Below, one piece after another: positions 5,851 through 33,672 of a stretch of DNA of 33,672 bases. Numbering within the stretch: the first letter of the stretch is position 1; the number at the start of each line of letters is the position of its first letter. The stretch is from Octopus bimaculoides (taxonomy: Eukaryota): positions 13,334,828 to 13,368,499 of the forward strand of contig NC_069006.1 of the NCBI RefSeq assembly GCF_001194135.2, in the 5' to 3' direction. The notes below the pieces were generated by a model, which searched no databases, had not been told where the DNA came from, and worked only from the letters and a program-made list of their open reading frames with translations. A program made the position numbers and the translations under genes.

Positions 5851-6170
5851 TGTGTGTGTGGTTGTTTGTAGTTGAATTATATTGTAATCCATACTTGGAT
5901 TTATCTAATTGTTTGAGTTAGATAAACGAGGCAAGTTCAAGATGGTTACCCGAACTTCTAGAAATAGCAGTCAAACTCCCCTCCCATCCAAATACACGTT
6001 GCAGACATAAAGTAGGACGACGTCTACTGGAATTAATGAGTGACAGATCTCTTCAGTCGAAGGCCGAAACTGATACACCCGAATGTTGGGTAGAAGCAGC
6101 GACATTGAGACAACCAAAGACGTACTGCCGCCCTTCCCATATTTATTCTCAATTTATATATTGGATATAA

Positions 6171-6385
6171 CGAGGGGACCTCTACGTAGCATACTAGAAA
6201 CAACAACGAAATCTCCCTCAAATCACATCACACCATCTTAAAAAAGAAATAAGATGGGGAAGACATATTGAACAAAGTAGTTGTGGATATATAAACAAAT
6301 CAAGATGGTCACGACTGGAACGTCTTTAGTCACGAGTCAATTCAATCAGAGTTAGGAGGGGTGCTGGGGCTAAACAATAACAGCA
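6171..6385 (+). mobile_element. Unclassified ~200-bp (AAC)n-tailed repeat (family D), one full unit
   Basis: GAGGGGACCTCTACGT..CTAGAAA..AAATCTCCCTCAAATCAC..GATGGTCACGACTGGAA..GGGGCTAAACAATAAC. Fragments also at ~5945-5985 (+) and ~6415-6445 (-). Confidence 0.75.
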
Positions 6386-6883
6386 CCTTATTGACGACAG
6401 ACTGCTAGTTCAGTGAATTTGGCTGCTATTTCTAGCGCTCCCAACGCCCGTTGGCTCTCACATGCATGAAGTAATGCGTTTGTATATGTATATAGGCATG
6501 TATGTATGTGCGTGTGTGTGTGTATCGAACAAGGAGTGGGGGAAAACTGAAACATATGGCTGGTTTGTTATAAAGTGTTTGTACATAATAATTCCTTCTA
6601 AGTCAGCAATTTTAAGGAGATTGGGTAAGTCGATTAGATCGACCCCAGTATTTGACAAGTGATTTGGTTTATCGAACGAAACTCATTAAACTCCGAACAT
6701 AAAGAGCTGAGTGTTTATATATATATATATATAATGTGGTACAATATTGTTGTATAACGTTTTATATTTTATAATGCGTCGTACAAACAAAACAGCATTT
6801 AAATGGAAAATTTAATGAAAATATATATATATTTTTAAGTAGATTCCATTCACTACATTAATGTATATGTATGTATGTATATG

Positions 6884-7055: not shown

Positions 7056-7861
7056 TGATCTATATATATATATATATGTGTGTGTGTGTGCGTGTGCGTG
7101 TGTGTGTAACACACAGATGCACATGAAGGTCACAAAGTGTTCGCTCGTCAATAAGTCCTACGTCACATATTGAGTACTTTTTGTGTGTGTCTACTGTCAC
7201 AAACTCATATTCAATGGCCTAGAAACACCAAATTTACGACGTTGTTACTCTGAGTTTCGCGTTACGACTTTCCGACTCGCAGTCTCTCTCTCACACACAC
7301 ACACACAAGCAGGTATATAACGGCGGAAATTTTAAGTCCGCTTCAAGTGTTTTGAAATATGTGAGATACAATAAAATGTGGAAAATTCCCGGAAAAAAAA
7401 AAAAAAAATCGGAGAAATTCCAATTTAAGCGCGACAGCTCTTCCGAAAATCCTTCTAAATATATACACGCACACATGCGTGTGTGCGTGTTTGTACGTTT
7501 ACATATATACACCGACAGGCATGAGAGAGAGAAGAGGGGGAGTGTACATGTGTATGACACGTGTGTGTGTGTGTGTGTGTGTATGTGTGTGTGTGTTGTA
7601 ATTCATGAATAAATTAAACGGGTGTAACTCAAGTGAGAAAGTCCAAGACGATCAACGGTATCATGATACCGTACTATATAATCGTACGTGGCCCAGTTAT
7701 TAAGTCAAACCGCCACGTTTCAATATTTTATCTCAAATTACTTGTTGGTACTGTTCTTAATTCTCAGCATAACCACGTTTCACAAACGTGAACAACTCGT
7801 CGTTTTTCTTAAGACTGCCTACAATTTCATGATCAAGAGTAGCTTTTAAATGCTAGAATGA

Positions 7862-8000
7862 GATATGAGTGATCTGGCTGCTGTTTCTAGTGAGAAGAGC
7901 GGCCACGTAGACGCCATTATCGCTGCTGTTGTTTAACCCTAAGTATCGATGATCGGTAAAACCTGACATACGCCAAGACGTGACCATCCAGGTTTATTTT
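7862..8000 (-). mobile_element. Family D tandem junction (tail of one unit followed by head of the next)
   Basis: Minus strand reads GATGGTCACG..GGGTTAAACAACAGC then AGCGAT..TCTACGTGGCCGCTC..CTAGAAACAGCAGCCAGATC. Confidence 0.7.
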
Positions 8001-8069
8001 CTCCCTGAGAGTGAATCGTATTTCAGGTTATTTATTACTTAATCACTTTTAAGTCTTAGCCAAGCAGAC

Positions 8070-8270
8070 AACAGGGACCTTCTTTCTACACAACCAACTA
8101 GAAACAACAGCCAAATTACCCACAAAAAACATACCATCGTCCTAGAAAAAATAAGGGTAAACTGGTCGTTGTCATGAACCGAGATACACTGCATCTGAAA
8201 ATACGATGGAATGGATCATGGTTGGATTGTGTTTGAGCATAGCTCTGCTTCATCAGGATTTCCCTGGGGT
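8070..8270 (+). mobile_element. Family D unit, decayed
   Basis: CAGGGACC..CTAGAAACAACAGCCAAATT..GATCATGGTTGGA..GCTCTGCTTCATCAGG..CTGGGGTCAAA. Confidence 0.65.
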
Positions 8271-8366
8271 CAAAAAAAAAACCCAGCTTATGAACCTCAC
8301 GCACCCTCTTTCACTTGGTGCTAACGATTCTACCAGCTCACCGCCTTATGGTTGGACAAAATAATG

Positions 8367-8759: not shown

Positions 8760-9380
8760 ACTATTTTTCCTATTAGCAACAGGGCAAATTTAAGACTGTT
8801 CTCATCAATACAGGTGACAAAAACTGTAATGCCTGAATTTGCACAATGTATAGCTCTGACTGCAAAATATTCTGGTAATATGTACATTCAAAGCAGAGCC
8901 CTCACTCTCCAGGTGACTCACTTTACAATTCCCATGCAGGTCGATTACTGATAATCTCAAAGAATGTGCAGAACTTATTGCTGAATGCTATGCTGGCATT
9001 TTTACTGCTGAAAATCCAAACGTAGATGTGTGCATAAATATTATGTAAGTCTTGAACTAAAACTACTGAATTGTTTAATGTTTTGAAAGGTGTAAGTCTC
9101 TAGGTGTAAATCAAGTGGACGTTTTGAAACCAAAGTAAAACCAGTTCTGGTTAGTGTAAAACTGGGTGGAGGGCAAAGCTCACAGGGAAGGATTGCCGAA
9201 TAGTGAAATGTATTGGGTCTGGAAAAAAAAAAACCCATCAAATTATAGCAGTAAAAGTGAAAGTAGAGTAAAGCTTTTACCTTGCCAACCCAGTATGAAC
9301 TAAGACCATCTATTGTGAGCTTTATAAAGTTAGATATCATGGCAGAACTTCAATTGGTAAACCTCTCCTGTTCCCCATCA
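8760..9380 (+). mobile_element. Decayed CR1/L2/Jockey-type LINE ORF2 remnant (endonuclease-RT linker)
   Basis: DCKIFW*YVHSKQ..(frameshift)..RSITDNLKECAELIAECYAGIFTAEN follows the K.FW.YV.SK..ITD..EKAE.L..YF.SVFT.E linker pattern. VNQVDVLK and FIKLDIMAELQLVNLSCSP lie downstream. Confidence 0.65.
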
Positions 9381-10869: not shown

Positions 10870-11039
10870 GTTATGACCATCCTGACTTTTCTTATATTAG
10901 GGATTATATCATCCAATATCTTTCATTTATACACTGCATCCATGTTGAAGTACTGCCTTGAAGAATTTTTGTCAAACGAATCAGTCCGGTTTTTATTCTA
11001 TCAGTCTCTTTGCCAAGCTGCTAAGTTACATGGATGTTC

Positions 11040-11110
11040 TTTCTTTTAAACAGATAAGATTTGGCTGCTGTTTTTAGCAGATCAAGAGACCATGTAGAGG
11101 CTCCCGAGTT
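11040..11110 (-). mobile_element. Family D head
   Basis: Minus strand GGGAGCCTCTACATGGTCTCTTGATCTGCTAAAAACAGCAGCCAAATC. Confidence 0.75.
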
Positions 11111-11454
11111 GGTTAATAAATGTCTTGCGGTATTTTAATCAGGTCACCTATTTAGGGATTCTACCCAGGTTCATTTGCTTCTCATTACTCTAGAATTGAC
11201 AAGCTAGTGAACCCTGGACCCCCGTAAAAGAAGAAATTTGGCCAGGTATCTTGTCAAATAATGACTTTCAACTTCAACAAAGTTGGCTCACATTTTGCTA
11301 TTAAGTTTCCATACAGAAAACGTCCCTGGGTACTCATTTGCTACCAAATGTCCAATACATATTTCTCTGGTCATCTAAGATTTGGAGGAACTTTGACAAA
11401 ATCTAAATAAATCCAAAACAGAGCGGAGTCATTACTGGGATGCCAGTTAATTAG

Positions 11455-13092: not shown

Positions 13093-13468
13093 TATATAAT
13101 ATATAATNNNNNNNNNNNNNNNNNNNNNNNNNNNNNNNNNNNNNNNNNNNNNNNNNNNNNNNNNNNNNNNNNNNNNNNNNNNNNNNNNNNNNNNNNNNNN
13201 NNNNNNNNNNNNNNNNNNNNNNNNNNNNNNNNNNNNNNNNNNNNNNNNNNNNNNNNNNNNNNNNNNNNNNNNNNNNNNNNNNNNNNNNNNNNNNNNNNNN
13301 NNNNNNNNNNNNNNNNNNNNNNNNNNNNNNNNNNNNNNNNNNNNNNNNNNNNNNNNNNNNNNNNNNNNNNNNNNNNNNNNNNNNNNNNNNNNNNNNNNNN
13401 NNNNNNNNNNNNNNNNNNNNNNNNNNNNNNNNNNNNNNNNNNNNNNNNNNNNNNNNNNNNTATATATG

Positions 13469-13516
<48 letters not shown>

Positions 13517-14852: not shown

Positions 14853-15207
14853 TGTGGCTGTATGTTAAGAAACTTGCTTCCAGGTTCATTGCCAGTGTGG
14901 CACCTTGGGCAAATGTCTTCTACTATAGTTTTGGACCGACCAAAGCCTTGTCAGTGGATTTGGTAGAAACTTAAATAAACCCGTCACACACATATATAAA
15001 TATATATGGGGGAGGTTGTTCCCCCACTACCGCTTGACAACCAGTGTTGGTGTGTTTACGTCCTCGTAACTTAGAGGTTCGGCAAAAGAGATCGATAGAA
15101 TAAGTACCAGGATTTTTAAAAAGTACTAGGGCAGGGCCAATTCGACTAAAAATTCTTCAAGGTGTGCCCCAGTATGGCCACAGTCTAGTGACTGAATCAA
15201 GTAAAGG
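14853..15207 (+). mobile_element. SINE family A, near full length
   Basis: GTGGCTGTATGTTAAG..GTGGCACCTTGGGCAAATGTCTTCTACTATAG..CCAGTATGGCCACAGTCTAGTGACTGAA. Confidence 0.85.
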
Positions 15208-20619: not shown

Positions 20620-20947
20620 TGTGACACTTCTGGCAAGTGTCTGCTACAAAAGCCACGGGCTAAGGCCTTGTGAATTCATTTGGTAGATGGAAACTGAAAG
20701 AAGCCTTTTGTGTGTATATATATGTGTGTCTTCGTTCTATGTTTTCCTTAACCACTGCTTGACAGCAGGTGTTGGTGTGTTTACATCCTCGTAATGTAGC
20801 GGTTCGGCAAAACAGACCAATAGAATAAGTACAAGGTTTTTAGAAATAAATACTAGGGTTTATTTGTACTAAAAATTCTTCATGGCAGTACTCCAGCATG
20901 GCCATAGTCTAATGAATGAAACGAGTAAAAGAAAAAGAAAAAAAAAA
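20620..20947 (+). mobile_element. SINE family A, 5'-truncated
   Basis: GGCAAGTGTC..TTTGGTAGATGGAAACTGAAAGAAGCC..CTCCAGCATGGCC..A-rich tail. Confidence 0.85.
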
Positions 20948-21235: not shown

Positions 21236-22140
21236 ACTCCTCAACATTTAACGTCTGTTCTCCATGCTAGAATGGCTTGACTGGCTTGACAGGAACTGGC
21301 AAGACCAGGGGTCACACCAAGTTCCATTGCCTGTTTCGGTTTGGTTTCTACAGCTGGGTGCCCTTGTAATGCCAACCACTCCATGAAGTGTACTGGGTGC
21401 TTTTATGTAGCACCATTACCAGTGCTTTTTACATGGCACCAGCACCCACACTAATGCTTTTTACGTGGCACCTTGGTTTTAGGATCTCAATTCTGTTGTG
21501 GTGGGCAGGTCTTCTTGAGAACAGCAATGTGCAACATGTCTTGATCCTCTGTCATCTCCTTCATAAGGTTTAGCATTTTGAGATCAGCCTTCAGTACTTC
21601 GTCCCATGTTTTCCTGGGTCTCCCTCTTTCACAACTCGTCCCCACTTTAAGTGATTGGCAATTCTTTATGCAACTTTCCTCATCCATCTGCATCACATGA
21701 CCAAGCCAGTGCAGCCTCCTCTCTTGCATACAGCATATAATTCCTCTTATGCCCAATTTCTCTCTCAATACACCAATGCTCTGTTGCACATGCACACTGA
21801 CATCTTACTCTAATGGAGCATACCAGCTTTGTTTCTCTCTAACCTTTGCATGTCCCCTATATTTAGGGACCATGTCTCACTACCATACAGCATCGCAGTT
21901 TGTACCCATGCATCATACAATCTTCCCTTCACTTGAAGAGAGAAACTGTTGGTTGCCAACAGAGGTAAAAGCTCTCTCAACTTTCTCCATTCTTTTCATA
22001 CTCTTGAAATTACACTTTCAATTACACAGCTAATTAAGTAGCAAAAATTATCTATAACTTCCAGAGGGCCACCGGGACATTTAAGGAAATTCGTTTCCTG
22101 TGAAATGGTGGTGACAATTTGTGAAAGCATCTCTAGATAG
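21236..22140 (-). mobile_element. Decayed RTE LINE: ORF2 C-terminal part, 3' UTR and tail
   Basis: LEVIDNFCYL; GIRGI..MQERRLHWLGHVMQMDEESC..RGRPRKTWDEVLKADL (RRLRW.GHV / GRPRKTW motifs). Tail at ~21240. A second tail fragment lies at ~20958-21100. Confidence 0.85.
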
Positions 22141-23480: not shown

Positions 23481-24161
23481 CTAAAATTTATAATAGGATA
23501 TGCATGCATATGTATGTATGTGCATAAACACACACACACACACACACAAGTAGTAAATTGGCTTAGTTTTTAGAGCATTGGATAGATTTATTGAGGTATT
23601 TCTTATGAGTCTCTGAGCTACAGGTTCAAAATCCTTCCATGGTCAACGTTGCCTCTCATCCTTTGCAGGGGTTGATAAAAAAAAATTCCCCTCGAGGGGG
23701 GTAAAATGGCAGAACTGTAAAAAGCTTGGGGGAGATGATTTGCTGTCTCTATCTAAGCTCTTTTTTTCTATGTTCCAGTAGGAATTGGTGCCAAAATTGG
23801 GGCCAACTAATTTCTGACTTGTTTGTTGGATAACCATGGTGGTATGGAGATGAGAGTATTGATTGCATTTTATCAGTTGCCTAATGGCAACGTTCAGCAT
23901 GAAACTGACAATAACATTCTAACCAGTTCTTTACCAAATCCACTCTGAAAGCTTTGGCAGAGTTTGGGTGATGGTTGAAGACACTTTCCATGTGTTATAC
24001 AGTAGAACTGAACTTGAAGCTATGCAACTGCCAAGCAAACCTCTTAACCATGCAGCTATGCTTCTGTCTTTGCCAGTCATAGCAAGGACATTTGTGCTGA
24101 CCAGCAGATCAATGATGAAAAGCAGTCAGGCTTTCACCACCCGATCATTTTTCGTGTAGGG

Positions 24162-24694
24162 TGTGATTTGCGTGAAATTTTGTGATTTGTGTGGAATTTT
24201 GTGATTTGTGGAATTTTGTGATTTGTGTGGAATTTTGTGATTTGTGTGGAATTTTGTGATTTGTGTGGAATTTTGTGATTTGCGTGAAATTTTGTGATTT
24301 GTGTGGAATTTTGTGACTTGCGTGAAATTTTGTGATTTGCGTGGAATTTTGTGATTTGTGTGGAATTTTGTGATTTGTGTGAAATTTTGTGATTTGCGTG
24401 AAATTTTGTGATNNNNNNNNNNNNNNNNNNNNNNNNNNNNNNNNNNNNNNNNNNNNNNNNNNNNNNNNNNNNNNNNNNNNNNNNNNNNNNNNNNNNNNNN
24501 NNNNNNNNNNNNNNNNNNNNNNNNNNNNNNNNNNNNNNNNNNNNNNNNNNTTGTGGAATTTTGTGATTTGTGTGGAATTTTGTGATTTGTGTGGAATTTT
24601 GTGATTTGTGTGGAATTTTGTGATTTGCGTGAAATTTTGTGATTTGTGTGAAATTTTGTGATTTGCGTGAAATTTTGTGATTTGTGTGGAATTT
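24162..24694. repeat. 19-bp minisatellite GTGATTTG(T/C)GTG(G/A)AATTTT
   Basis: At least 20 visible units. N gap at 24413-24550. The 19-aa periodicity in the ORF track confirms the unit length. Confidence 0.95.
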
Positions 24695-24736
24695 CTAGCA
24701 TGTAGCTTCCCCCTTTGGCTTGTCTTAGATGATGCA

Positions 24737-25300
24737 TGTAGGAGAATCAACCATGCTGCTTATGGTCATGTGACTTGAATGGACAGTAGCCATCAGGTGG
24801 AACAGATGTAGCCTACTGTCAAGACATTATATAGCAGGAACAAACTACTTCATGGCATTGTAGGGGTGATTTGAAACTTAACTCCCAAGTAACTGGTCAG
24901 ATACCATGACTGCACTACAATAGTTTCACTTGATTGGCCTATTAGGCAACCAGTCAGTATCAGGCCATTGTGAGATTTGATCTTCTAGAATCTTCTTGTA
25001 GCATATAAAAGGCCACTTTTGGCAGTAATCAGTCACAGAATGCTGGAAGCAGCTGAGTGACATGTGCCTTCTTCTTACTATTTGATGGTGTCAGACATTT
25101 GCGCAGACAACTCCAGGGTCTTGGACAGACTGAGCCAAACATTCATACCGTGTCTCAAAAGTAACTTCTTTGAATGTGATGTGGCTTCCCTTTCTCTCCC
25201 AGATTGTAATTATGGCTGTTGTTAACTGTAAACGGTCAACTCAGTTTGTCCTTATGTGCAACAATAAAGCCTTTGGTTAAATGTTTGCGGGTTTTGTTCA
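24737..25300 (+). mobile_element. Solo-LTR-like element
   Basis: TG...CA ends, ATTGG 24933-24937, TATAAAAGG 25004-25012, AATAAA 25263-25268. No TSD found. Confidence 0.4.
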
Positions 25301-25304
25301 GGTA

Positions 25305-25575
25305 CTTCTTGTGAGTGGATCTGGCAGATGGAAACTGAAAGAAGCCCATCATATATGGATATATACCTATGTGTCTGTGTTTGTCCCTGTCACCACCTGA
25401 CAACCGGTGTTGATGTGTTTATGTCCCCGTAACTTAGCAGTTCGGCAAAAGAGACTGAAAGAATAAGTACCAGGCTTAAAAGATAAGTACTAGGGTCGAT
25501 TCATTCGGTTAAAAATTCAAGGTAATGGCCGCAGTCTAGTGACTGAAATTGGTAAAAGGTAAAAGATTAAAAGAA
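25305..25575 (+). mobile_element. SINE family A, 5'-truncated
   Basis: TTGTGAGTGGATCTGGCAGATGGAAACTGAAAGAAGCCC..GTCCCCGTAACTTAGCAGTTCGGCAAAAGAG..GGCCGCAGTC. Confidence 0.85.
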
Positions 25576-25740
25576 TTAAGTTTTATAGAATATGGTTACT
25601 TTCGGTAGAGTGGAGGCATAATTTACAAAATGGAGATGGGGCATGGAGCGTATTTTCTGTTGTCCCGATCCAAAAAGCCATTCCTATCTTGGGCATCATT
25701 TTACACATTGGTCCACATATAAGTCTTTATTTGAGAAAAT

Positions 25741-26180
25741 CATGTGATTTGAGGGAGATTTGGCTGCTACTTCTAGCAGATCAAGCGACCACATAGAGTC
25801 TGCCTTGTTACTTGAAAGTATTTTGAAGTTATTTAGCCCTAGACCCACTTTGATCAAAAGCATTCCAGCCATGACTATCCCACCTTTTTAAAGCTATCTA
25901 AGGACTACATTATCTAATGTGTTCACTTTTTTTCAACATATAACAGAAAATTTGGCTGCTATTCCTAGCAGATCAAGCAACTGCATAGAGACTCCTTCAT
26001 CACTTCAACATATTTTCAATTGTTGTTTAGCCCTACATCAACTATAATGAAAAGCACTCCAACTATGACCCCCTCACTTTTTCAGAGCTAATTTAAGGAC
26101 TACATTATCTAATACATTCTTCACTTTCTCTAAGGCAACATGATACAACTGAGGGATGTTTGGCTGCTATTTTCTATGAG
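25741..26180 (-). mobile_element. Family D head-to-tail tandem (two units plus part of a third)
   Basis: TGGCTGCTA at 25761, 25953 and 26161 (periods 192 and 208). TTTAGCCCT at 25832 and 26026. Confidence 0.85.
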
Positions 26181-26191
26181 ATCACACAGAA

Positions 26192-26252
<61 letters not shown>

Positions 26253-27344
26253 CATCCTGCCCGCCCTCTTTCTGTGTCTTTATAGACTTGAACAATAATA
26301 TTTAATGCCTGGTGATAATGCTTCCAAGATTTCTTCCCTAATTTTGGGTGGAGATCAAACAATAATCTTCACTGCCGCCACTACCAAGTCTACGTAATTC
26401 CTATGCCTCTAATCAAACCTCTGACACGTTGTTACAGACAAACAAATAGGTCAATAACACTTGTTTACCTTCCATTGTGTGACCTAAATATCCCTCTTTG
26501 AATGCATTCACAGGGGAATATTTCCAAGTGTCAGATGGAGCAGTCGGTGAAGGAACCAGTAGCTTATACCTCATTAAATGCACACACACACACACACGCA
26601 CACGCACACATGCATGCACACACACACACACACCGCACACACATGTACATACACACACAAACACATACATATATACATACACACACACACATGCACAAAC
26701 ATTCACATGTGCATATATATATATGTGCAGATGTGTATGTGTGTGCATGCACATGTATGTATGTATGTATATATACATATATATATATATATANNNNNNN
26801 NNNNNNNNNNNNNNNNNNNNNNNNNNNNNNNNNNNNNNNNNNNNNNNNNNNNNNNNNNNNNNNNNNNNNNNNNNNNNNNNNNNNNNNNNNNNNNNNNNNN
26901 NNNNNNNNNNNNNNNNNNNNNNNNNNNNNNNNNNNNNNNNNNNNNNNNNNNNNNNNNNNNNNNNNNNNNNNNNNNNNNNNNNNNNNNNNNNNNNNNNNNN
27001 NNNNNNNNNNNNNNNNNNNNNNNNNNNNNNNNNNNNNNNNNNNNNNNNNNNNNNNNNNNNNNNNNNNNNNNNNNNNNNNNNNNNNNNNNNNNNNNNNNNN
27101 NNNNNNNNNNNNNNNNNNNNNNNNNNNNNNNNNNNNNNNNNNNNNNNNNNNNNNNNNNNNNNNNNNNNNNNNNNNNNNNNNNNNNNNNNNNNNNNNNNNN
27201 NNNNNNNNNNNNNNNNNNNNNNNNNNNNNNNNNNNNNNNNNNNNNNNNNNNNNNNNNNNNNNNNNNNNNTATATATATATTAATAATAATAATATGACAA
27301 CAAAATAATGAATGAGATCTCAATACTGTGTAAATAAAGGAATT

Positions 27345-30261: not shown

Positions 30262-30686
30262 ACTCTTTACTCTTTCCTTGTTTCAGTCATTTGACTGCGG
30301 CCATGCTGGAGCACCACCTTTAGTCGAGCAAATTGACCCCAGGACTTATTCTTTGGATGCCTAGTACTTATTCTATCGGTCTCTTTTGCTGAACCGCTAA
30401 GTTACAGGGACATAAACACACCAGCATCGGTTGTCAAGCGATGTTGGGGGGGGGGAACAAACACAGACACACAAACATATACACACATATACACACACAT
30501 ACATACATATATACATATATACGACGGGCTTCTTTCAGTTTCCGTCTACCAAATCCACTCACAAGGCTTTGGTCGGTCCGAGGCTATAGTAGAAGACACT
30601 TGCCCAAGGTGCCACACAGTGGGAATGAACCCAGAACCATGTGGTTGGTAAGCAAGCTACTTACCACACAGCCACTCCTGTGCCTA
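30262..30686 (-). mobile_element. SINE family A, full-length and least decayed copy
   Basis: Minus strand: GGCACAGGAGTGGCTGTGTGG (A box), GGTTCATTCCC (B-box-like), GTGGCACCTTGGGCAAGTGTCTTC (CORE-like), internal microsatellite, (GTAAAGA) tail. TACATT on both flanks. Confidence 0.92.
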
Positions 30687-30734
30687 CATTTGACGGATAT
30701 TTGTCCTTATCTTGTTTATTGTTAATTGAGCATG

Positions 30735-30925
30735 TGTGTTTGTCCCTCCACAATCACTTAACAACCAATGTTGGTGTGTTTACATCCCCGTAACTTAGCG
30801 GTTCATCAAAAGAGACCAATAGAATAATGACTAGGCTTATAAAGAATAAATACTGGGGTCGATTTGTTCGACTAAAGGCAGTGTTCCAGCATGGCCACAG
30901 TCAAATCACTGAAAAGAATAAAAGA
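30735..30925 (+). mobile_element. SINE family A, 3' half
   Basis: GTGTGTTTACATCCCCGTAACTTAGCGGTTC..CTGGGGTCGATTTGTTCGACTAAAGG..CCAGCATGGCCACAGTC. Confidence 0.85.
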
Positions 30926-31966: not shown

Positions 31967-33672
31967 TCATCATCATCATCATCATCGTTTAACGTCCGCT
32001 TTCCATGCTAGCATGGGTTGGACGATTTGATTGAGGACTGGTGAAACCGGATGGCAACACCAGGCTCCAATCTAATTTGGCAGAGTTTCTACAGCTGGAT
32101 GCCCTTCCTAACGCCAACCACTCAGAGAGTGTAGTGGGTGCTTTTACGTGCCACCCACACGAAAATGGCCACGCTCGAAATGGTGNNNNNNNNNNNNNNN
32201 NNNNNNNNNNNNNNNNNNNNNNNNNNNNNNNNNNNNNNNNNNNNNNNNNNNNNNNNNNNNNNNNNNNNNNNNNNNNNNNNNNNNNNNNNNNNNNNNNNNN
32301 NNNNNNNNNNNNNNNNNNNNNNNNNNNNNNNNNNNNNNNNNNNNNNNNNNNNNNNNNNNNNNNNNNNNNNNNNNNNNNNNNNNNNNNNNNNNNNNNNNNN
32401 NNNNNNNNNNNNNNNNNNNNNNNNNNNNNNNNNNNNNNNNNNNNNNNNNNNNNNNNNNNNNNNNNNNNNNNNNNNNNNNNNNNNNNNNNNNNNNNNNNNN
32501 NNNNNNNNNNNNNNNNNNNNNNNNNNNNNNNNNNNNNNNNNNNNNNNNNNNNNNNNNNNNNNNNNNNNNNNNNNNNNNNNNNNNNNNNNNNNNNNNNNNN
32601 NNNNNNNNNNNNNNNNNNNNNNNNNNNNNNNNNNNNNNNNNNNNNNNNNNNNNNNNNNNNNNNNNNNNNNNNNNNNNNNNNNNNNNNNNNNNNNNNNNNN
32701 NNNNNNNNNNNNNNNNNNNNNNNNNNNNNNNNNNNNNNNNNNNNNNNNNNNNNNNNNNNNNNNNNNNNNNNNNNNNNNNNNNNNNNNNNNNNNNNNNNNN
32801 NNNNNNNNNNNNNNNNNNNNNNNNNNNNNNNNNNNNNNNNNNNNNNNNNNNNNNNNNNNNNNNNNNNNNNNNNNNNNNNNNNNNNNNNNNNNNNNNNNNN
32901 NNNNNNNNNNNNNNNNNNNNNNNNNNNNNNNNNNNNNNNNNNNNNNNNNNNNNNNNNNNNNNNNNNNNNNNNNNNNNNNNNNNNNNNNNNNNNNNNNNNN
33001 NNNNNNNNNNNNNNNNNNNNNNNNNNNNNNNNNNNNNNNNNNNNNNNNNNNNNNNNNNNNNNNNNNNNNNNNNNNNNNNNNNNNNNNNNNNNNNNNNNNN
33101 NNNNNNNNNNNNNNNNNNNNNNNNNNNNNNNNNNNNNNNNNNNNNNNNNNTTGTGTTTTATCTACCTTCATACTTATTAGGATTTTGGTTTTTGCTAGGT
33201 TGACTCTAAGGCCCTTCAATTCTAGTCCTTGCTTCCACACCTGAAACTTCTCCTCTAGTTCTGATAGTGACTCCGCAATTAGTGCAAGGTAATCAGCATA
33301 GAGGAGCTCCCAGGGGTAACCTGTCTTGAATTCCTCTGTGTTCGCCTGGAGGACTATGATAAATAGGAGGGGGCTGAGGACGGAACCTTGGTGGACCCCT
33401 ACCTCTACCCGGAATTCATTACTGTACTCACTTCCAACCCTCATCTTACTGGCAGCATCTCTGTACATGGCTCGCACAGCTCTCACTAACCATTCTTCTA
33501 TCCCAAGTTTCCTCATTGACCACCAGATAAGGGATCGGGGGACCCTGTCAAAGGCTTTCTCCATGTCAACGAAGGCCAGGTACAGAGGTTTATTCTTGGC
33601 TAGGTATTTCTCCTGCAGCTGTCTCACTAGAAATATGGCATCAGTGGTGCTTTTACCTGGCACGAACCCAAA
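31967..33672 (-). mobile_element. RTE-clade LINE, continuing beyond the window: RT domain, N gap, 3' UTR and (GAT)n tail
   Basis: RT visible at 33151-33663, tail at 31967-32185, with an N gap at 32186-33150. That they form one element is inferred from orientation and spacing. Confidence 0.9.
33151..33663 (-). pseudogene. RTE-type reverse transcriptase fragment with YADD changed to YADY
   Basis: FMPGKSTTDAIF, AFVDMEKAFDRVPR, GVHQGSVLSPLLF, WELLYADY, GLRVNLAKTK. TATGCTGATTAC at 33300-33289. Confidence 0.92.

What the first reader, a model, noticed from the sequence alone, without database searches (positions are those of the whole stretch)
25741..26180. Tandem ~200-bp (AAC)n-tailed retroposon whose 5' end has HDV/CPEB3-ribozyme-like topology (retrozyme-like candidate)
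Seen: at least nine pieces of family D in the window, with head-to-tail junctions here (periods 192 and 208) and at ~7920. A consensus rebuilt by eye from the copies at 5945, 6171, 7862, 11055, 25750 and 25945, correcting CpG decay, reads TCAAGCGA-Y-GAGGGAG-CC-TCTACGT-GG-TCGCTYGA-T-CTGCTA-GAAA-TAGCAG-CCAAAT-CTCCCTC. The helices fall in the order P1a-P2a-P3a-L3-P3b-P1b-P4-J4/2-P2b. Established: this is the nested double-pseudoknot order of HDV-like ribozymes; CPEB3 L3 is UUCACGU and J4/2 carries C-N-A-A; HDV-like ribozymes process 5' ends of R2/RTE/L1-type elements; and metazoan retrozymes are short tandem units delimited by ribozymes. Inference: a non-autonomous element that self-processes multimeric transcripts into monomers. 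Mismatches to the canon: P3 is only 2 bp (3 with a G-U), there is no GG in J1/4, J4/2 is longer, and G1 is not evident. All copies here are decayed, so it may be a non-catalytic pseudoknot.
Basis: partly seen in the sequence, partly recalled or inferred. Interest (0 to 1): 0.75.

Follow-up and report, generated by a model that had tools for sequence, protein, structure and literature searches.

The report
Decayed octopus retroposon with ribozyme-like head
This is an old, mutated, roughly 200-base mobile-DNA repeat of an octopus genome, sitting head-to-tail in short arrays; its rebuilt ancestral 5' end can be drawn as an HDV-like self-cleaving RNA, but no copy here still folds that way and cleavage is unproven.

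Summary
The repeat is real. I count eleven pieces in the window and at least three more in an Octopus vulgaris locus. Sense is the minus strand at 25647-26184. Units are about 170-230 nt and about 76% alike. They have an A-rich, AAC-containing 3' end and variable 5' truncation.

The ribozyme reading rests on a reconstructed ancestor, not on any copy.
- A hand-made, CpG-corrected consensus passes a literature-style HDV-like descriptor. Human CPEB3 also passes it. It found nothing in about 220 kb of real strand sequence or 286 kb of shuffles.
- L3 (UCUACGU), the P4 hairpin and J4/2 (CCAAAU) are the best-kept parts of the element.
- No genomic copy passes. Copies A and B score inside the window's background.
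- P1 and P2 pair no better than when slid by one column.
- There is no covariation, and RNAalifold finds no pairs.
- Automated consensuses do not recover the P1 5' strand.
- Rfam gives no ribozyme hit.

Best reading: a dead, promoter-less, non-autonomous non-LTR retroposon. Its 5' module is, with about 40% confidence, the relic of an HDV-like 5'-processing ribozyme. The retrozyme or circular-RNA idea is untested.

The parts
25647..25815 (-). Unit A of the array: 5' module, body, 3' block remnant and A-rich end GGGACAACAG followed by AAAATACGCT.
   Evidence: nhmmer; unit extraction; sequence.
25816..26007 (-). Unit B, a complete 192-nt unit.
26008..26184 (-). Unit C. Its 5' part is broken by the (CT)n microsatellite at 26193-26252, which sits in the P2a position.
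25751..25815 (-). 5' module of unit A, the best-kept copy. Proposed parts: P1a 25808-25815, P2a 25800-25806, P3a 25798-25799, L3 25791-25797, P3b 25789-25790, P1b 25781-25788, P4 stem-loop 25764-25779, J4/2 25758-25763, P2b 25751-25757.
   Evidence: Read. In this copy P1 has 7 of 8 pairs, P2 has 5 of 7, P3 has 1 of 2 and P4 has 6 of 6. The MFE z-score is only -0.16.
25943..26007 (-). 5' module of unit B. P4 is intact at 25956-25971, J4/2 CCAAAT is at 25950-25955, and P2b is decayed.
   Evidence: MFE z-score +0.89.
26008..26033 (-). C-to-B junction: A-rich end GGGCTAAACAACAA (26020-26033) plus the 12-nt segment TTGAAAATATGT (26008-26019).
   Evidence: The same 12-mer class recurs upstream of D, upstream of Y in L001, and at the end of E.
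25816..25839 (-). B-to-A junction: GGGCTAAATAAC (25828-25839) plus TTCAAAATACTT (25816-25827).
25855..25881 (-). Conserved 3' block of unit B. The family consensus is roughly RGATGGTCAYGGCTGGAAYGYYTTT.
   Evidence: Alignment; present in G, C, X2, E0, H, D and Y.
5925..6392 (+). Units F (5' module followed by a different body) and G (a complete unit with a deleted P1b). G ends in GGGGCTAAACAATAACAGCACC.
6387..6470 (-). Copy I: an inverted 5' module fragment abutting the end of G.
7723..7998 (-). E0 (5'-truncated at about unit position 131, 7998->7925) joined tail-to-head to the full unit E (7926->7723).
8059..8300 (+). Unit H, ending in GGGGTCAAAAAAAAAA.
10871..11148 (-). Unit D (longer body), preceded by a tail-and-spacer piece of another unit at 11117-11148.
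24104..24740 (-). Copy M. A 5' module remnant is at about 24690-24727 and the 3' block is at 24104-24153. A 19-bp minisatellite and an assembly gap have expanded between them.

Best explanation
Family D is an ancient, now dead, non-autonomous non-LTR retroposon of octopods, about 170-290 bp long.

Shown:
- It has no tRNA or other Pol III-type head (ARAGORN and Rfam found none) and no ORF.
- It has a fixed A-rich, AAC-containing 3' end and variable 5' truncation.
- It is often found head-to-tail.
- About 65 nt at its 5' end form a conserved module.

Inferred, about 40% likely:
- In the active master copies, that module was an HDV-like self-cleaving ribozyme.
- Its proposed parts are: P1 CAAGCGA/UCGCUUG; P2 GAGGGA(G)/(C)UCCCUC; P3 (G)CC/GG(U); L3 UCUACGU; a weak P1.1 of U:A plus C:U; a P4 GAAA-capped hairpin; and J4/2 CCAAAU, whose first C would be the general acid.
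- The ribozyme would cut the RNA free at its own 5' end from read-through or multimeric transcripts, as R2, RTE and L1Tc/NARTc do.
- A LINE reverse transcriptase, not identified here, would then copy the RNA from its 3' end.
- The head-to-tail arrays would arise in one of two ways: insertion into the A-rich ends of older copies, or the reverse transcriptase jumping from the 5' end of one RNA to the 3' end of another.

Every copy in this window is too mutated to cleave today.
For: Retroposon part:
- In a dimer-HMM map, 3' ends cluster at the unit end and 5' starts lie at unit positions 7-16, 37, 131 and 188.
- The ends are A-rich.
- There is no tRNA, no Rfam family and no ORF longer than 62 aa in the units.
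- Mean pairwise identity is 76%. CpG observed/expected is 0.40 and TpG+CpA is 1.29, which indicates old, methylation-decayed copies.
- Copies are also present in O. vulgaris.

Ribozyme part:
- The CpG-corrected consensus passes a strict descriptor: P1 of 6 bp, P3 of 3 bp, a 7-nt L3 with U1 and G6, at least one Watson-Crick P1.1 pair, P4, J4/2 beginning C with A at +3, and P2. Human CPEB3 also passes it.
- That descriptor gave 0 hits in the masked window on both strands and 0 in 286 kb of shuffles. It gave 0 in L001, L002, L023 and L024 on both strands. An earlier, stricter version gave 0 in 1.66 Mb of shuffles.
- Leaving P1 out altogether, a fully automatic G-INS-i majority consensus still passes. 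The chance rate is 1.3e-5 per base, about 0.006 for one 220-nt unit on both strands.
- The segment GAAATAGCAGCCAAAT, which covers the P4 loop, the P4 3' strand and J4/2, holds all six invariant and all four near-invariant columns. TCTAYGT is kept in 8 of 12 copies.
- P4 pairs in 65% of cells, against 8-51% when slid.
- The held-out test supports a CAAGCGAY-like P1a.

Precedent:
- L1TcRz is active with C at +1 and a one-pair P1.1. It is shared by the non-autonomous element NARTc, whose RNA also self-cleaves, and both elements occur in tandem (PMC3185411).
- R2 ribozymes have a P1 of 6-7 bp, a P2 of at least 5 bp, and a variable P4 (PMC3774820).
- A fast C. briggsae HDV-like ribozyme has a P1.1 made of U:A plus C:U (PMC13635239).
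Against: - No genomic copy passes any of my descriptors.
- Copies A and B lie inside the window's background in a permissive scan.
- Their folding energies are not unusual: z-scores are -0.16 and +0.89.
- P1 and P2 are no better than the -1 slide.
- There is no covariation: 146 of 500 shuffles reach the observed pairing.
- RNAalifold finds 0 pairs.
- Five automatic consensuses do not give TCAAGCGA.
- The descriptors were written after the candidate had been seen.
- P3 is only two G-C pairs plus a possible G.U pair.
- There is no G1.U wobble.
- P4a position 3 is A in 7 of 12 copies, which gives an A.C mismatch in P4.
- Some O. vulgaris copies (Y, X2) keep the upstream 12-mer but lack a recognisable P1a.
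- No autonomous partner was found.
- No RNA data were available.
Confidence: 0.4

Rival explanations
1. It is the same retroposon, but the 5' module is a non-catalytic structured or sequence element. It could be an internal promoter, a protein- or reverse-transcriptase-binding hairpin, or a 5'-end integration signal. The HDV-like drawing is then a coincidence helped by consensus-building by eye.
For: - Only the P4 hairpin is register-specific across copies.
- P1 and P2 are not. P2 is a purine run facing a pyrimidine run, which pairs in several registers.
- The automatic consensus lacks P1a.
- Topology-only matches are common: 5.6e-5 per base under the strict rule and 5.7e-4 per base without P1.
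- Rfam is silent.
- P3 is short and there is no G1.U wobble.
Against: - The conserved single-stranded letters fall where HDV-like cores need them: L3 U1 and G6, and J4/2 beginning C with A at +3.
- With these letters required, the chance rate is about 0.006 per unit without P1. With P1 it is below detection.
- The element has no recognisable promoter, so it needs some way to gain a defined 5' end.
Confidence: 0.38
2. It is not a retroposon. It is a roughly 200-bp satellite-like repeat spread as short arrays by DNA-level events. These could be unequal exchange, or carriage inside a DNA transposon as in the Helentron-borne repeats of bivalves (that comparison is from my own knowledge, not a tool result).
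For: - Almost every copy has a neighbour: tail-and-spacer pieces lie upstream of A, B, D and Y.
- The 12-nt spacer belongs to the repeated unit.
- Microsatellites and a minisatellite are embedded in copies.
- Units within an array are as diverged as units between loci.
Against: - 3' ends cluster at one unit position while 5' ends vary. That is the signature of target-primed reverse transcription.
- The ends are A-rich, including a pure A10 run in H.
- No conserved array flanks or terminal inverted repeats were seen.
- Arrays hold only 1.3 to about 3 units.
Confidence: 0.1
3. The pieces are merely variably 5'-truncated 3' UTRs of a LINE. This is the alternative the reader named as one that would refute the finding.
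For: - 5' truncation occurs (E0 at unit position 131).
- LINE fragments of the RTE type are abundant in the window and in L001.
Against: - Many copies (A, B, G, X2, E, H, D) carry the same 5' module at a similar distance from the 3' end, so there is a discrete full-length unit of about 170-290 nt.
- No copy continues upstream into coding sequence.
- The 3' end of the local RTE, downstream of its ORF at 21487, is a different sequence with a different end.
Confidence: 0.05

Closest known systems
NARTc / L1Tc of Trypanosoma cruzi (L1TcRz, an HDV-like ribozyme in the first 77 nt)
   Same: NARTc is a short non-autonomous, non-coding retroposon. Its first tens of nucleotides are an HDV-like ribozyme that sets its own 5' end. 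That ribozyme is active with C at +1 and a one-pair P1.1. Copies occur both singly and in tandem (PMC3185411).
   Different: - The L1Tc ribozyme is proven to cleave, doubles as a promoter (Pr77), and is shared with a known autonomous partner. None of this is shown here.
- It has a 3-bp P3, whereas this candidate has two G-C pairs plus a possible G.U pair.
- There is no sequence similarity between the two.
R2 ribozymes and R2-derived internally deleted non-autonomous elements (SIDEs)
   Same: A 5' HDV-like ribozyme frees the element RNA from a co-transcript. P1 is 6-7 bp, P2 is at least 5 bp, P4 is variable, and L3 has a conserved U...G pair (PMC3774820). The existence of SIDEs that keep the ribozyme and the 3' UTR, and of end-to-end template jumping by the R2 enzyme, is from my own knowledge.
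   Different: R2 is specific for a site in the 28S rRNA gene. Family D is dispersed in A/T-rich, repeat-rich DNA. No R2-like partner was seen.
CPEB3 and C. briggsae HDV-like ribozymes
   Same: - L3 is UCUACGU, against UUCACGU in CPEB3 (CPEB3 written from memory).
- J4/2 begins C-N-A-A.
- The possible P1.1 of U:A plus C:U matches what is described for the C. briggsae ribozyme (PMC13635239).
- CPEB3 and the family-D consensus pass the same descriptor.
   Different: - CPEB3 (G1.U wobble from my recollection of its sequence) has a G1.U wobble and a 3-bp G-C P3, and both it and the C. briggsae ribozyme are proven catalysts.
- Family D has C1-G (or U1-A) at the cut site and a weaker P3.
- Rfam models of these families do not hit any copy.
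Animal non-LTR retrozymes
   Same: Both are short tandem units of about 170-400 bp, non-coding and dispersed as monomers, dimers and multimers. Each retrozyme unit carries a small self-cleaving ribozyme (PMC7229834; bioRxiv 10.64898/2026.07.22.740005).
   Different: - Retrozymes are defined by type I hammerheads and are linked to Penelope-like elements. I saw no hammerhead core (CUGANGA ... GAAA) by eye on either strand of the 5'-module consensus, and Rfam reported no hammerhead.
- Circular RNA is unproven here.
- The 3'-anchored, 5'-truncated copy pattern fits linear target-primed reverse transcription better than rolling-circle copying.

Membership tests
HDV-like self-cleaving ribozymes | Nested double pseudoknot in the order P1-P2-P3-L3-P3'-P1'-(P1.1)-P4-J4/2-P2'. 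| tested here: inconclusive
   Present in the hand-made, CpG-corrected consensus. Absent from every genomic copy and from automatic majority consensuses.
HDV-like self-cleaving ribozymes | P1 of 6-7 bp starting at the cleavage site. | tested here: inconclusive
   47.6% of cells are paired, against 49.4% with the partner slid by -1. P1a is recovered only by hand alignment. The held-out test gives P = 0.005 and P = 0.016.
HDV-like self-cleaving ribozymes | P2 of at least 5 bp closing the outer pseudoknot. | tested here: inconclusive
   The consensus GAGGGAG/CTCCCTC is complementary. Across copies, 54.5% of cells are paired against 53.2% at the -1 slide.
HDV-like self-cleaving ribozymes | P3 of 3 bp, usually G-C rich. 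| tested here: inconclusive
   The consensus has CC/GG plus a possible G.U pair borrowed from the ends of P2 and P1. 70% of cells are paired for the two pairs.
HDV-like self-cleaving ribozymes | A 7-nt L3 with a U...G reverse-wobble pair (U at position 1, G at position 6). | tested here: met
   The consensus is TCTAYGT. T1 is kept in 10 of 12 copies and G6 in 7 of 12. The importance of this pair is described in PMC3774820 and PMC13635239.
HDV-like self-cleaving ribozymes | P1.1 mini-helix between L3 and J1/4. | tested here: inconclusive
   With a 6- or 7-bp P1 (6 bp is the register that passes the descriptor), L3 U3 can pair with A of J1/4, and C2 faces U or C. This resembles the U:A plus C:U described for C. 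briggsae (PMC13635239). It amounts to only one Watson-Crick pair.
HDV-like self-cleaving ribozymes | Catalytic C opening J4/2, with A three positions on. | tested here: met
   CCAAAT lies within the most conserved stretch of the element. It is exact in 6 of 12 copies.
HDV-like self-cleaving ribozymes | G1.U wobble at the cleavage site. | tested here: not met
   The consensus P1 starts C-G (or U-A if P1 is 8 bp). This is not universal: the L1Tc element begins with C at +1, as the primers in PMC3185411 show.
HDV-like self-cleaving ribozymes | Mg2+-dependent site-specific self-cleavage. | not testable with these tools
   This needs a bench experiment.
Animal non-LTR retrozymes | A type I hammerhead in each tandem unit. 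| tested here: not met
   No hammerhead family was found in Rfam at the gathering threshold or at E <= 10. I saw no CUGANGA core by eye in the 5'-module consensus on either strand.
Animal non-LTR retrozymes | Unit-length circular RNAs. | not testable with these tools
SINE (canonical) | Head derived from a Pol III gene (tRNA, 5S or 7SL) with A and B boxes. | tested here: not met
   ARAGORN found 0 genes. Rfam gave no hit.
Non-autonomous non-LTR retroposon | Common 3' end with an A-rich or simple-repeat tail, variable 5' truncation, and no coding capacity. | tested here: met
Non-autonomous non-LTR retroposon | A 3' end shared with an autonomous LINE partner, and target-site duplications. | tested here: inconclusive
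   No partner was found in 54 kb of octopus DNA. The 3' end of the local RTE is different. The copies are too decayed for target-site duplications to be read.

The most novel reading that the evidence does not exclude
Family D was an HDV-type 'retrozyme'. Tandem units were transcribed as multimers. Each unit's HDV-like ribozyme cut them into monomers of about 200 nt with 5'-OH and cyclic-phosphate ends. The monomers were circularised by the cellular RNA ligase and copied back into DNA, which seeded new short arrays. This would be the first retrozyme class built on a ribozyme other than the hammerhead, and the first self-cleaving mobile RNA described in cephalopods.
Probability: 0.08. Interest if true: 0.8.

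Novelty: new member of a known kind. Interest (0 to 1): 0.42.

Why it matters
HDV-like ribozymes are known to set the 5' ends of R2, RTE and L1Tc-type retrotransposons. They are also known in a few non-autonomous derivatives of these. My literature searches turned up no report of one from cephalopods, although octopus genomes are packed with short retroposons.

If the reconstruction is right, several things follow:
- An abundant octopod repeat family would have used self-cleavage instead of a promoter.
- That would explain how a head-less, SINE-sized element got a defined 5' end.
- It would give a cheap, directly testable ribozyme candidate: one consensus transcript and one C-to-U control.
- It would raise the question whether tandem HDV-type units can behave like hammerhead retrozymes.

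If the reconstruction is wrong, this is an ordinary old repeat.

Tried and rejected
No RNA or DNA reads could be laid, and read laying was never used.

Attempts to get more octopus copies
- Metagenome scan for CTAGAAAYAGCAGCCAAAT: 20 hits, all without family-D context, so chance matches.
- Protein search with a SINE-derived peptide that I wrote from memory: no candidates. This was a wasted search.
- RT fragment search: only one Octopus protein, P0003. It gave the 20.9-kb O. vulgaris locus L001.
- P0001, P0013, P0002 and P0121 turned out to be other invertebrates or metagenome contigs with no family D.
- A nuclear-receptor query gave no further octopus loci.
- A window ORF is not on record in the collection.
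- Full-text search for sequence strings of the element found only unrelated primer matches.

Other identities considered and dropped
- Rfam at the gathering threshold, and at E <= 10 over the copies: only microsatellite artefacts.
- Hammerhead: I saw no CUGANGA core by eye in the 5'-module consensus on either strand, and Rfam reported no hammerhead.
- U2-snRNA-like resemblance of the plus strand (UUUGGCU ... AGAUCAAG ... GUAG): seen by eye, but there is no Rfam support.
- tRNA-derived head: ARAGORN found none.
- The octopus RTE as partner: its 3' end differs.

Other notes
- TRF does not report the ~200-bp array, because the units are only about 75% alike.
- Two first runs of my topology scan timed out on (TA)n tracts before I masked simple repeats.
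Full report
**What the window is.** The window is eukaryotic, about 36% G+C and full of microsatellites and assembly gaps. It carries RTE-type LINE fragments: an RT ORF at 32122-33663(-) and a C-terminal ORF at 21487-21795(-). The RT fragment is 79% identical in protein to a hypothetical protein of Octopus vulgaris (P0003). Its DNA, and several SINE-like repeats, match the O. vulgaris chromosome locus L001 at 81-95%. So the window comes from an octopod genome. I could not name the species.

**Is the repeat there?** Yes.
- Self-BLAST of 25741-26180 finds two internal shifted matches of 74-75% identity over 222-235 bp, and weaker matches at 6194-6228 and 11035-11137.
- Profile searches and direct reading give eleven pieces in the window. 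They are listed under parts.
- At least three more pieces lie in O. vulgaris L001, at 18654->18584, 18543->18329 and 8875->8795.
- The sense strand is the one that ends in an A-rich stretch. At the finding's coordinates that is the minus strand.
The junction near 7920 is also real.
- TRF misses the array because the units are too diverged.

**Anatomy of a unit.**
- A conserved 5' module of about 65 nt, followed by AAATCACA.
- A poorly conserved body of 70-130 nt.
- A conserved 3' block (about RGATGGTCAYGGCTGGAAYGYYTTT).
- About 30 nt later, GGGGCTAAAC(AAC)1-2 or a purer A run (GGGGTCAAAAAAAAAA in H).
- A 12-nt segment, TTGAAAATATGT. It recurs after the A-rich stretch in separate loci and in O. 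vulgaris.
- The '(AAC)n tail' is therefore only partly right.

**Retroposon features.**
- Units are 72-83% identical pairwise (mean 76%). CpG observed/expected is 0.40 and TpG+CpA is in excess. The copies are old and decayed by methylation.
- There is no ORF above 62 aa, no tRNA-like head and no Rfam family.
- On a dimer profile, 3' ends fall near the unit end. 5' starts fall at unit positions 7-16, 37, 131 and 188.
- A fixed 3' end with variable 5' truncation is the mark of LINE-mediated target-primed reverse transcription.
- The E0-E pair is a 5'-truncated unit whose end abuts the first bases of a full unit. This is what insertion into an older copy's tail would give. It is also what a reverse transcriptase jumping from the 5' end of one RNA to the 3' end of another would give. 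That mechanism is my inference from established knowledge of R2-type enzymes, not a tool result.

**The ribozyme claim: real copies.** Three independent checks on the real copies are negative.
- Rfam has no HDV-like, CPEB3 or any other ribozyme hit over the copies, even at E <= 10. This is weak evidence, because these models are narrow and cannot score pseudoknots.
56.6% of cells pair, against 31-44% when the 3' partners are slid. But the shuffle control gives 55.5%, reached in 146 of 500 shuffles. So the complementarity belongs to the consensus and nothing covaries.
- Helix by helix, only P4 is register-specific: 65% against 8-51%. P1 (47.6% against 49.4% at -1) and P2 (54.5% against 53.2% at -1) are not. 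RNAalifold predicts no pair at all.
- A permissive scan for the HDV helix order scores copy A at 18 and copy B at 17.5, and finds nothing in D or E. On the masked minus strand of the window, 146 start positions reach 18 or more, and unrelated sequence reaches 21.
- The minimum-free-energy folds of A and B are unremarkable, and D is marginal: z-scores are -0.16, +0.89 and -1.90.
- So what sits at 25741-26180 today is not distinguishable from chance as an HDV-like fold.

**The ribozyme claim: the reconstructed ancestor.** Dead copies decay independently, so neither covariation nor intact folds are expected. The fair question is whether the master sequence had the fold.
- Majority rule alone recovers (G/A)AGGGAG-CC-TCTATGT-GG-T(C/T)GCTTGA-(C/T)-CT(A/G)CTA-GAAA-TAGCAG-CCAAAT-CTCCCTC.
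- The C/T and G/A splits at TCTAYGT and TYGCTT are what decayed CpGs look like.
- The P1 5' strand is the weak point. Five MAFFT settings give GAACAAAC, AAACTAAC or GAACTAAT, not TCAAGCGA.
- My own column tally, allowing one-base shifts, does give T-C-A-A-G-C-R-A-Y. Examples: A TCAAGTAAC, B TGAAGTGAT, E CA-GCGAT, H CAAGC(A)GAC, M CAAGCCAA, I TCATGC-AT, X1 AAAGCTAAT.
- A fairer held-out test took the motif from A, B and E only and fitted it to the 24 nt upstream of P2a in ten other copies. It beats 99.5% of shuffled flanks, and it is equalled or beaten by only 27 of 1680 permutations of itself. A cruder pairwise test was only about 2 SD above random.
- I rate P1a as probable, not established.

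**Does the consensus look like an HDV-like ribozyme?** I wrote a descriptor from published features:
- P1 of 6-7 bp.
- P2 of at least 5 bp.
- P3 of 3 bp.
- A 7-8-nt L3 with U at position 1 and G at position 6.
- At least one Watson-Crick P1.1 pair.
- P4.
- J4/2 of 4-7 nt, opening with C and with A at +3.

The sources are PMC3774820, PMC3185411 and PMC13635239.

Results with this descriptor:
- The human CPEB3 ribozyme, written from memory, passes. So does the CpG-corrected family-D consensus.
- In the family-D consensus the parts are: P1 CAAGCG/CGCTTG, J1/2 AC, P2 GAGGGA/TCCCTC, P3 GCC/GGT, L3 TCTACGT, J1/4 AT, P4 CTGCTA-GAAA-TAGCAG and J4/2 CCAAATC.
- The descriptor has no hit in the masked window on either strand or in 286 kb of dinucleotide shuffles. 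It has no hit in four other loci on both strands. A stricter first version had none in 1.66 Mb of shuffles.
- Dropping P1 entirely and using the untouched G-INS-i majority consensus, the remaining pattern still matches. That pattern is P2, P3, L3 with U...G, P4, and J4/2 with C..A. Its chance rate is 1.3e-5 per base, about 0.006 for one unit on both strands.
- These figures are optimistic, because the rules were fixed after the candidate had been seen. One of the five automatic consensuses I ran it on (L-INS-i) fails even the P1-less rule.

**Position of the conserved letters.** The invariant and near-invariant columns of the 12-copy alignment all lie in GAAATAGCAGCCAAAT. That stretch is the P4 loop, the P4 3' strand and J4/2. 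TCTAYGT (L3) is kept in 8 of 12 copies. Dead copies are not under selection. Uneven conservation is therefore better read as several master lineages sharing these parts, which is where an HDV-like core would be constrained. This is an inference.

- Missing G1: L1TcRz cleaves with C at +1 (primer sequences in PMC3185411).
- No GG in J1/4: L1TcRz has a one-pair P1.1. The fast C. briggsae ribozyme has U:A plus C:U (PMC13635239). Family D would form the same combination if P1 is read as 6 or 7 bp.
- Short P3: this remains a weakness.
- In addition, P4a position 3 is A in 7 of 12 copies and G in 4 (A, B, D, I). So most copies have an A.C mismatch in P4, and there seem to be at least two subfamilies.

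**Weighing.** I am confident (about 0.85) that this is an old non-autonomous non-LTR retroposon family in head-to-tail arrays. Whether its 5' module was a working HDV-like ribozyme is open. I put it at about 0.4, slightly ahead of 'conserved but non-catalytic 5' structure' at 0.38. A DNA-level satellite or transposon-borne repeat (0.1) and plain LINE 3' fragments (0.05) fit the 3'-anchored, discrete-unit pattern less well.

**The retrozyme idea.** Known animal retrozymes carry type I hammerheads and are tied to Penelope-like elements (PMC7229834; bioRxiv 10.64898/2026.07.22.740005), and I saw no hammerhead core here. The copy pattern also favours linear target-primed reverse transcription over rolling-circle copying.

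**Limits.** Only 54 kb of octopus DNA could be examined (the window plus L001), giving about 14 copies. All attempts to reach more octopus sequence failed (see Tried and rejected). A proper genome-wide consensus and one in vitro cleavage assay would settle the question.

Noticed in passing
window 24104-24740 (-): A 19-bp minisatellite (TRF 24162-24412 and 24552-24694, with an N gap between them) lies inside a family-D copy. It sits between a 5' module remnant (ACAAGCCAAAGGGGGAAGCTACATGCTAGAAAT) and the 3' block. Its unit looks like an expansion of the family's AAATCACA segment.
   Followed up: partly
window 26193-26330: The (CT)n microsatellite at 26193-26252 sits where P2a (GAGGGAG) of unit C should be. 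Beyond it, in sense orientation, GTTCAAGTC (P1a-like) and GGCATTAAATATTATTG (tail/spacer-like) suggest that the array continues past the finding's end.
   Followed up: partly
window 25816-25827 and 26008-26019; about 11120-11135; L001 about 8875-8890; end of E about 7723-7740: A 12-nt segment, TTGAAAATATGT, follows the A-rich 'tail' in separate loci and in both genomes. Terminal units (G, H, E) seem to run on into a P1a-like 7-9-mer before homology stops. This could be terminal redundancy, read-through into a lost next unit, or a target-site preference. It is unexplained.
   Followed up: partly
window 32122-33663 (-) and 21487-21795 (-); L001 9357-11243 (+): RTE-type LINE fragments: an RT domain, a PHD-like zinc finger in the L001 copy, and a conserved C-terminus. 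The 3' UTR downstream of 21487 resembles the 3' ends of the abundant octopus SINEs, not family D.
   Followed up: partly
window 13108-13479 and 26775-27146: The '100% complementary, 372-nt inverted repeat' reported by the repeat finder is two runs of N (assembly gaps), so it is an artefact. In all, 2427 N are present in the window.
   Followed up: yes
window 14987-15114, 20712-20839, 25350-25477, 30711-30838; also 30281-30451 / 30744-30914 (inverted): A different short interspersed repeat family is present: four direct copies of about 128 nt at 64-75% identity to the reference copy, and an inverted pair at 85%. One copy lies 170 bp from the family-D array.
   Followed up: no
window 5990-6164 (+): Copy F has the 5' module but then a different body with a 44-aa ORF (6036-6170, MSDRSLQSKAETDTPECWVEAATLRQPKTYC...). 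It could be chance, or the start of a longer relative of the family. I did not search with it.
   Followed up: no
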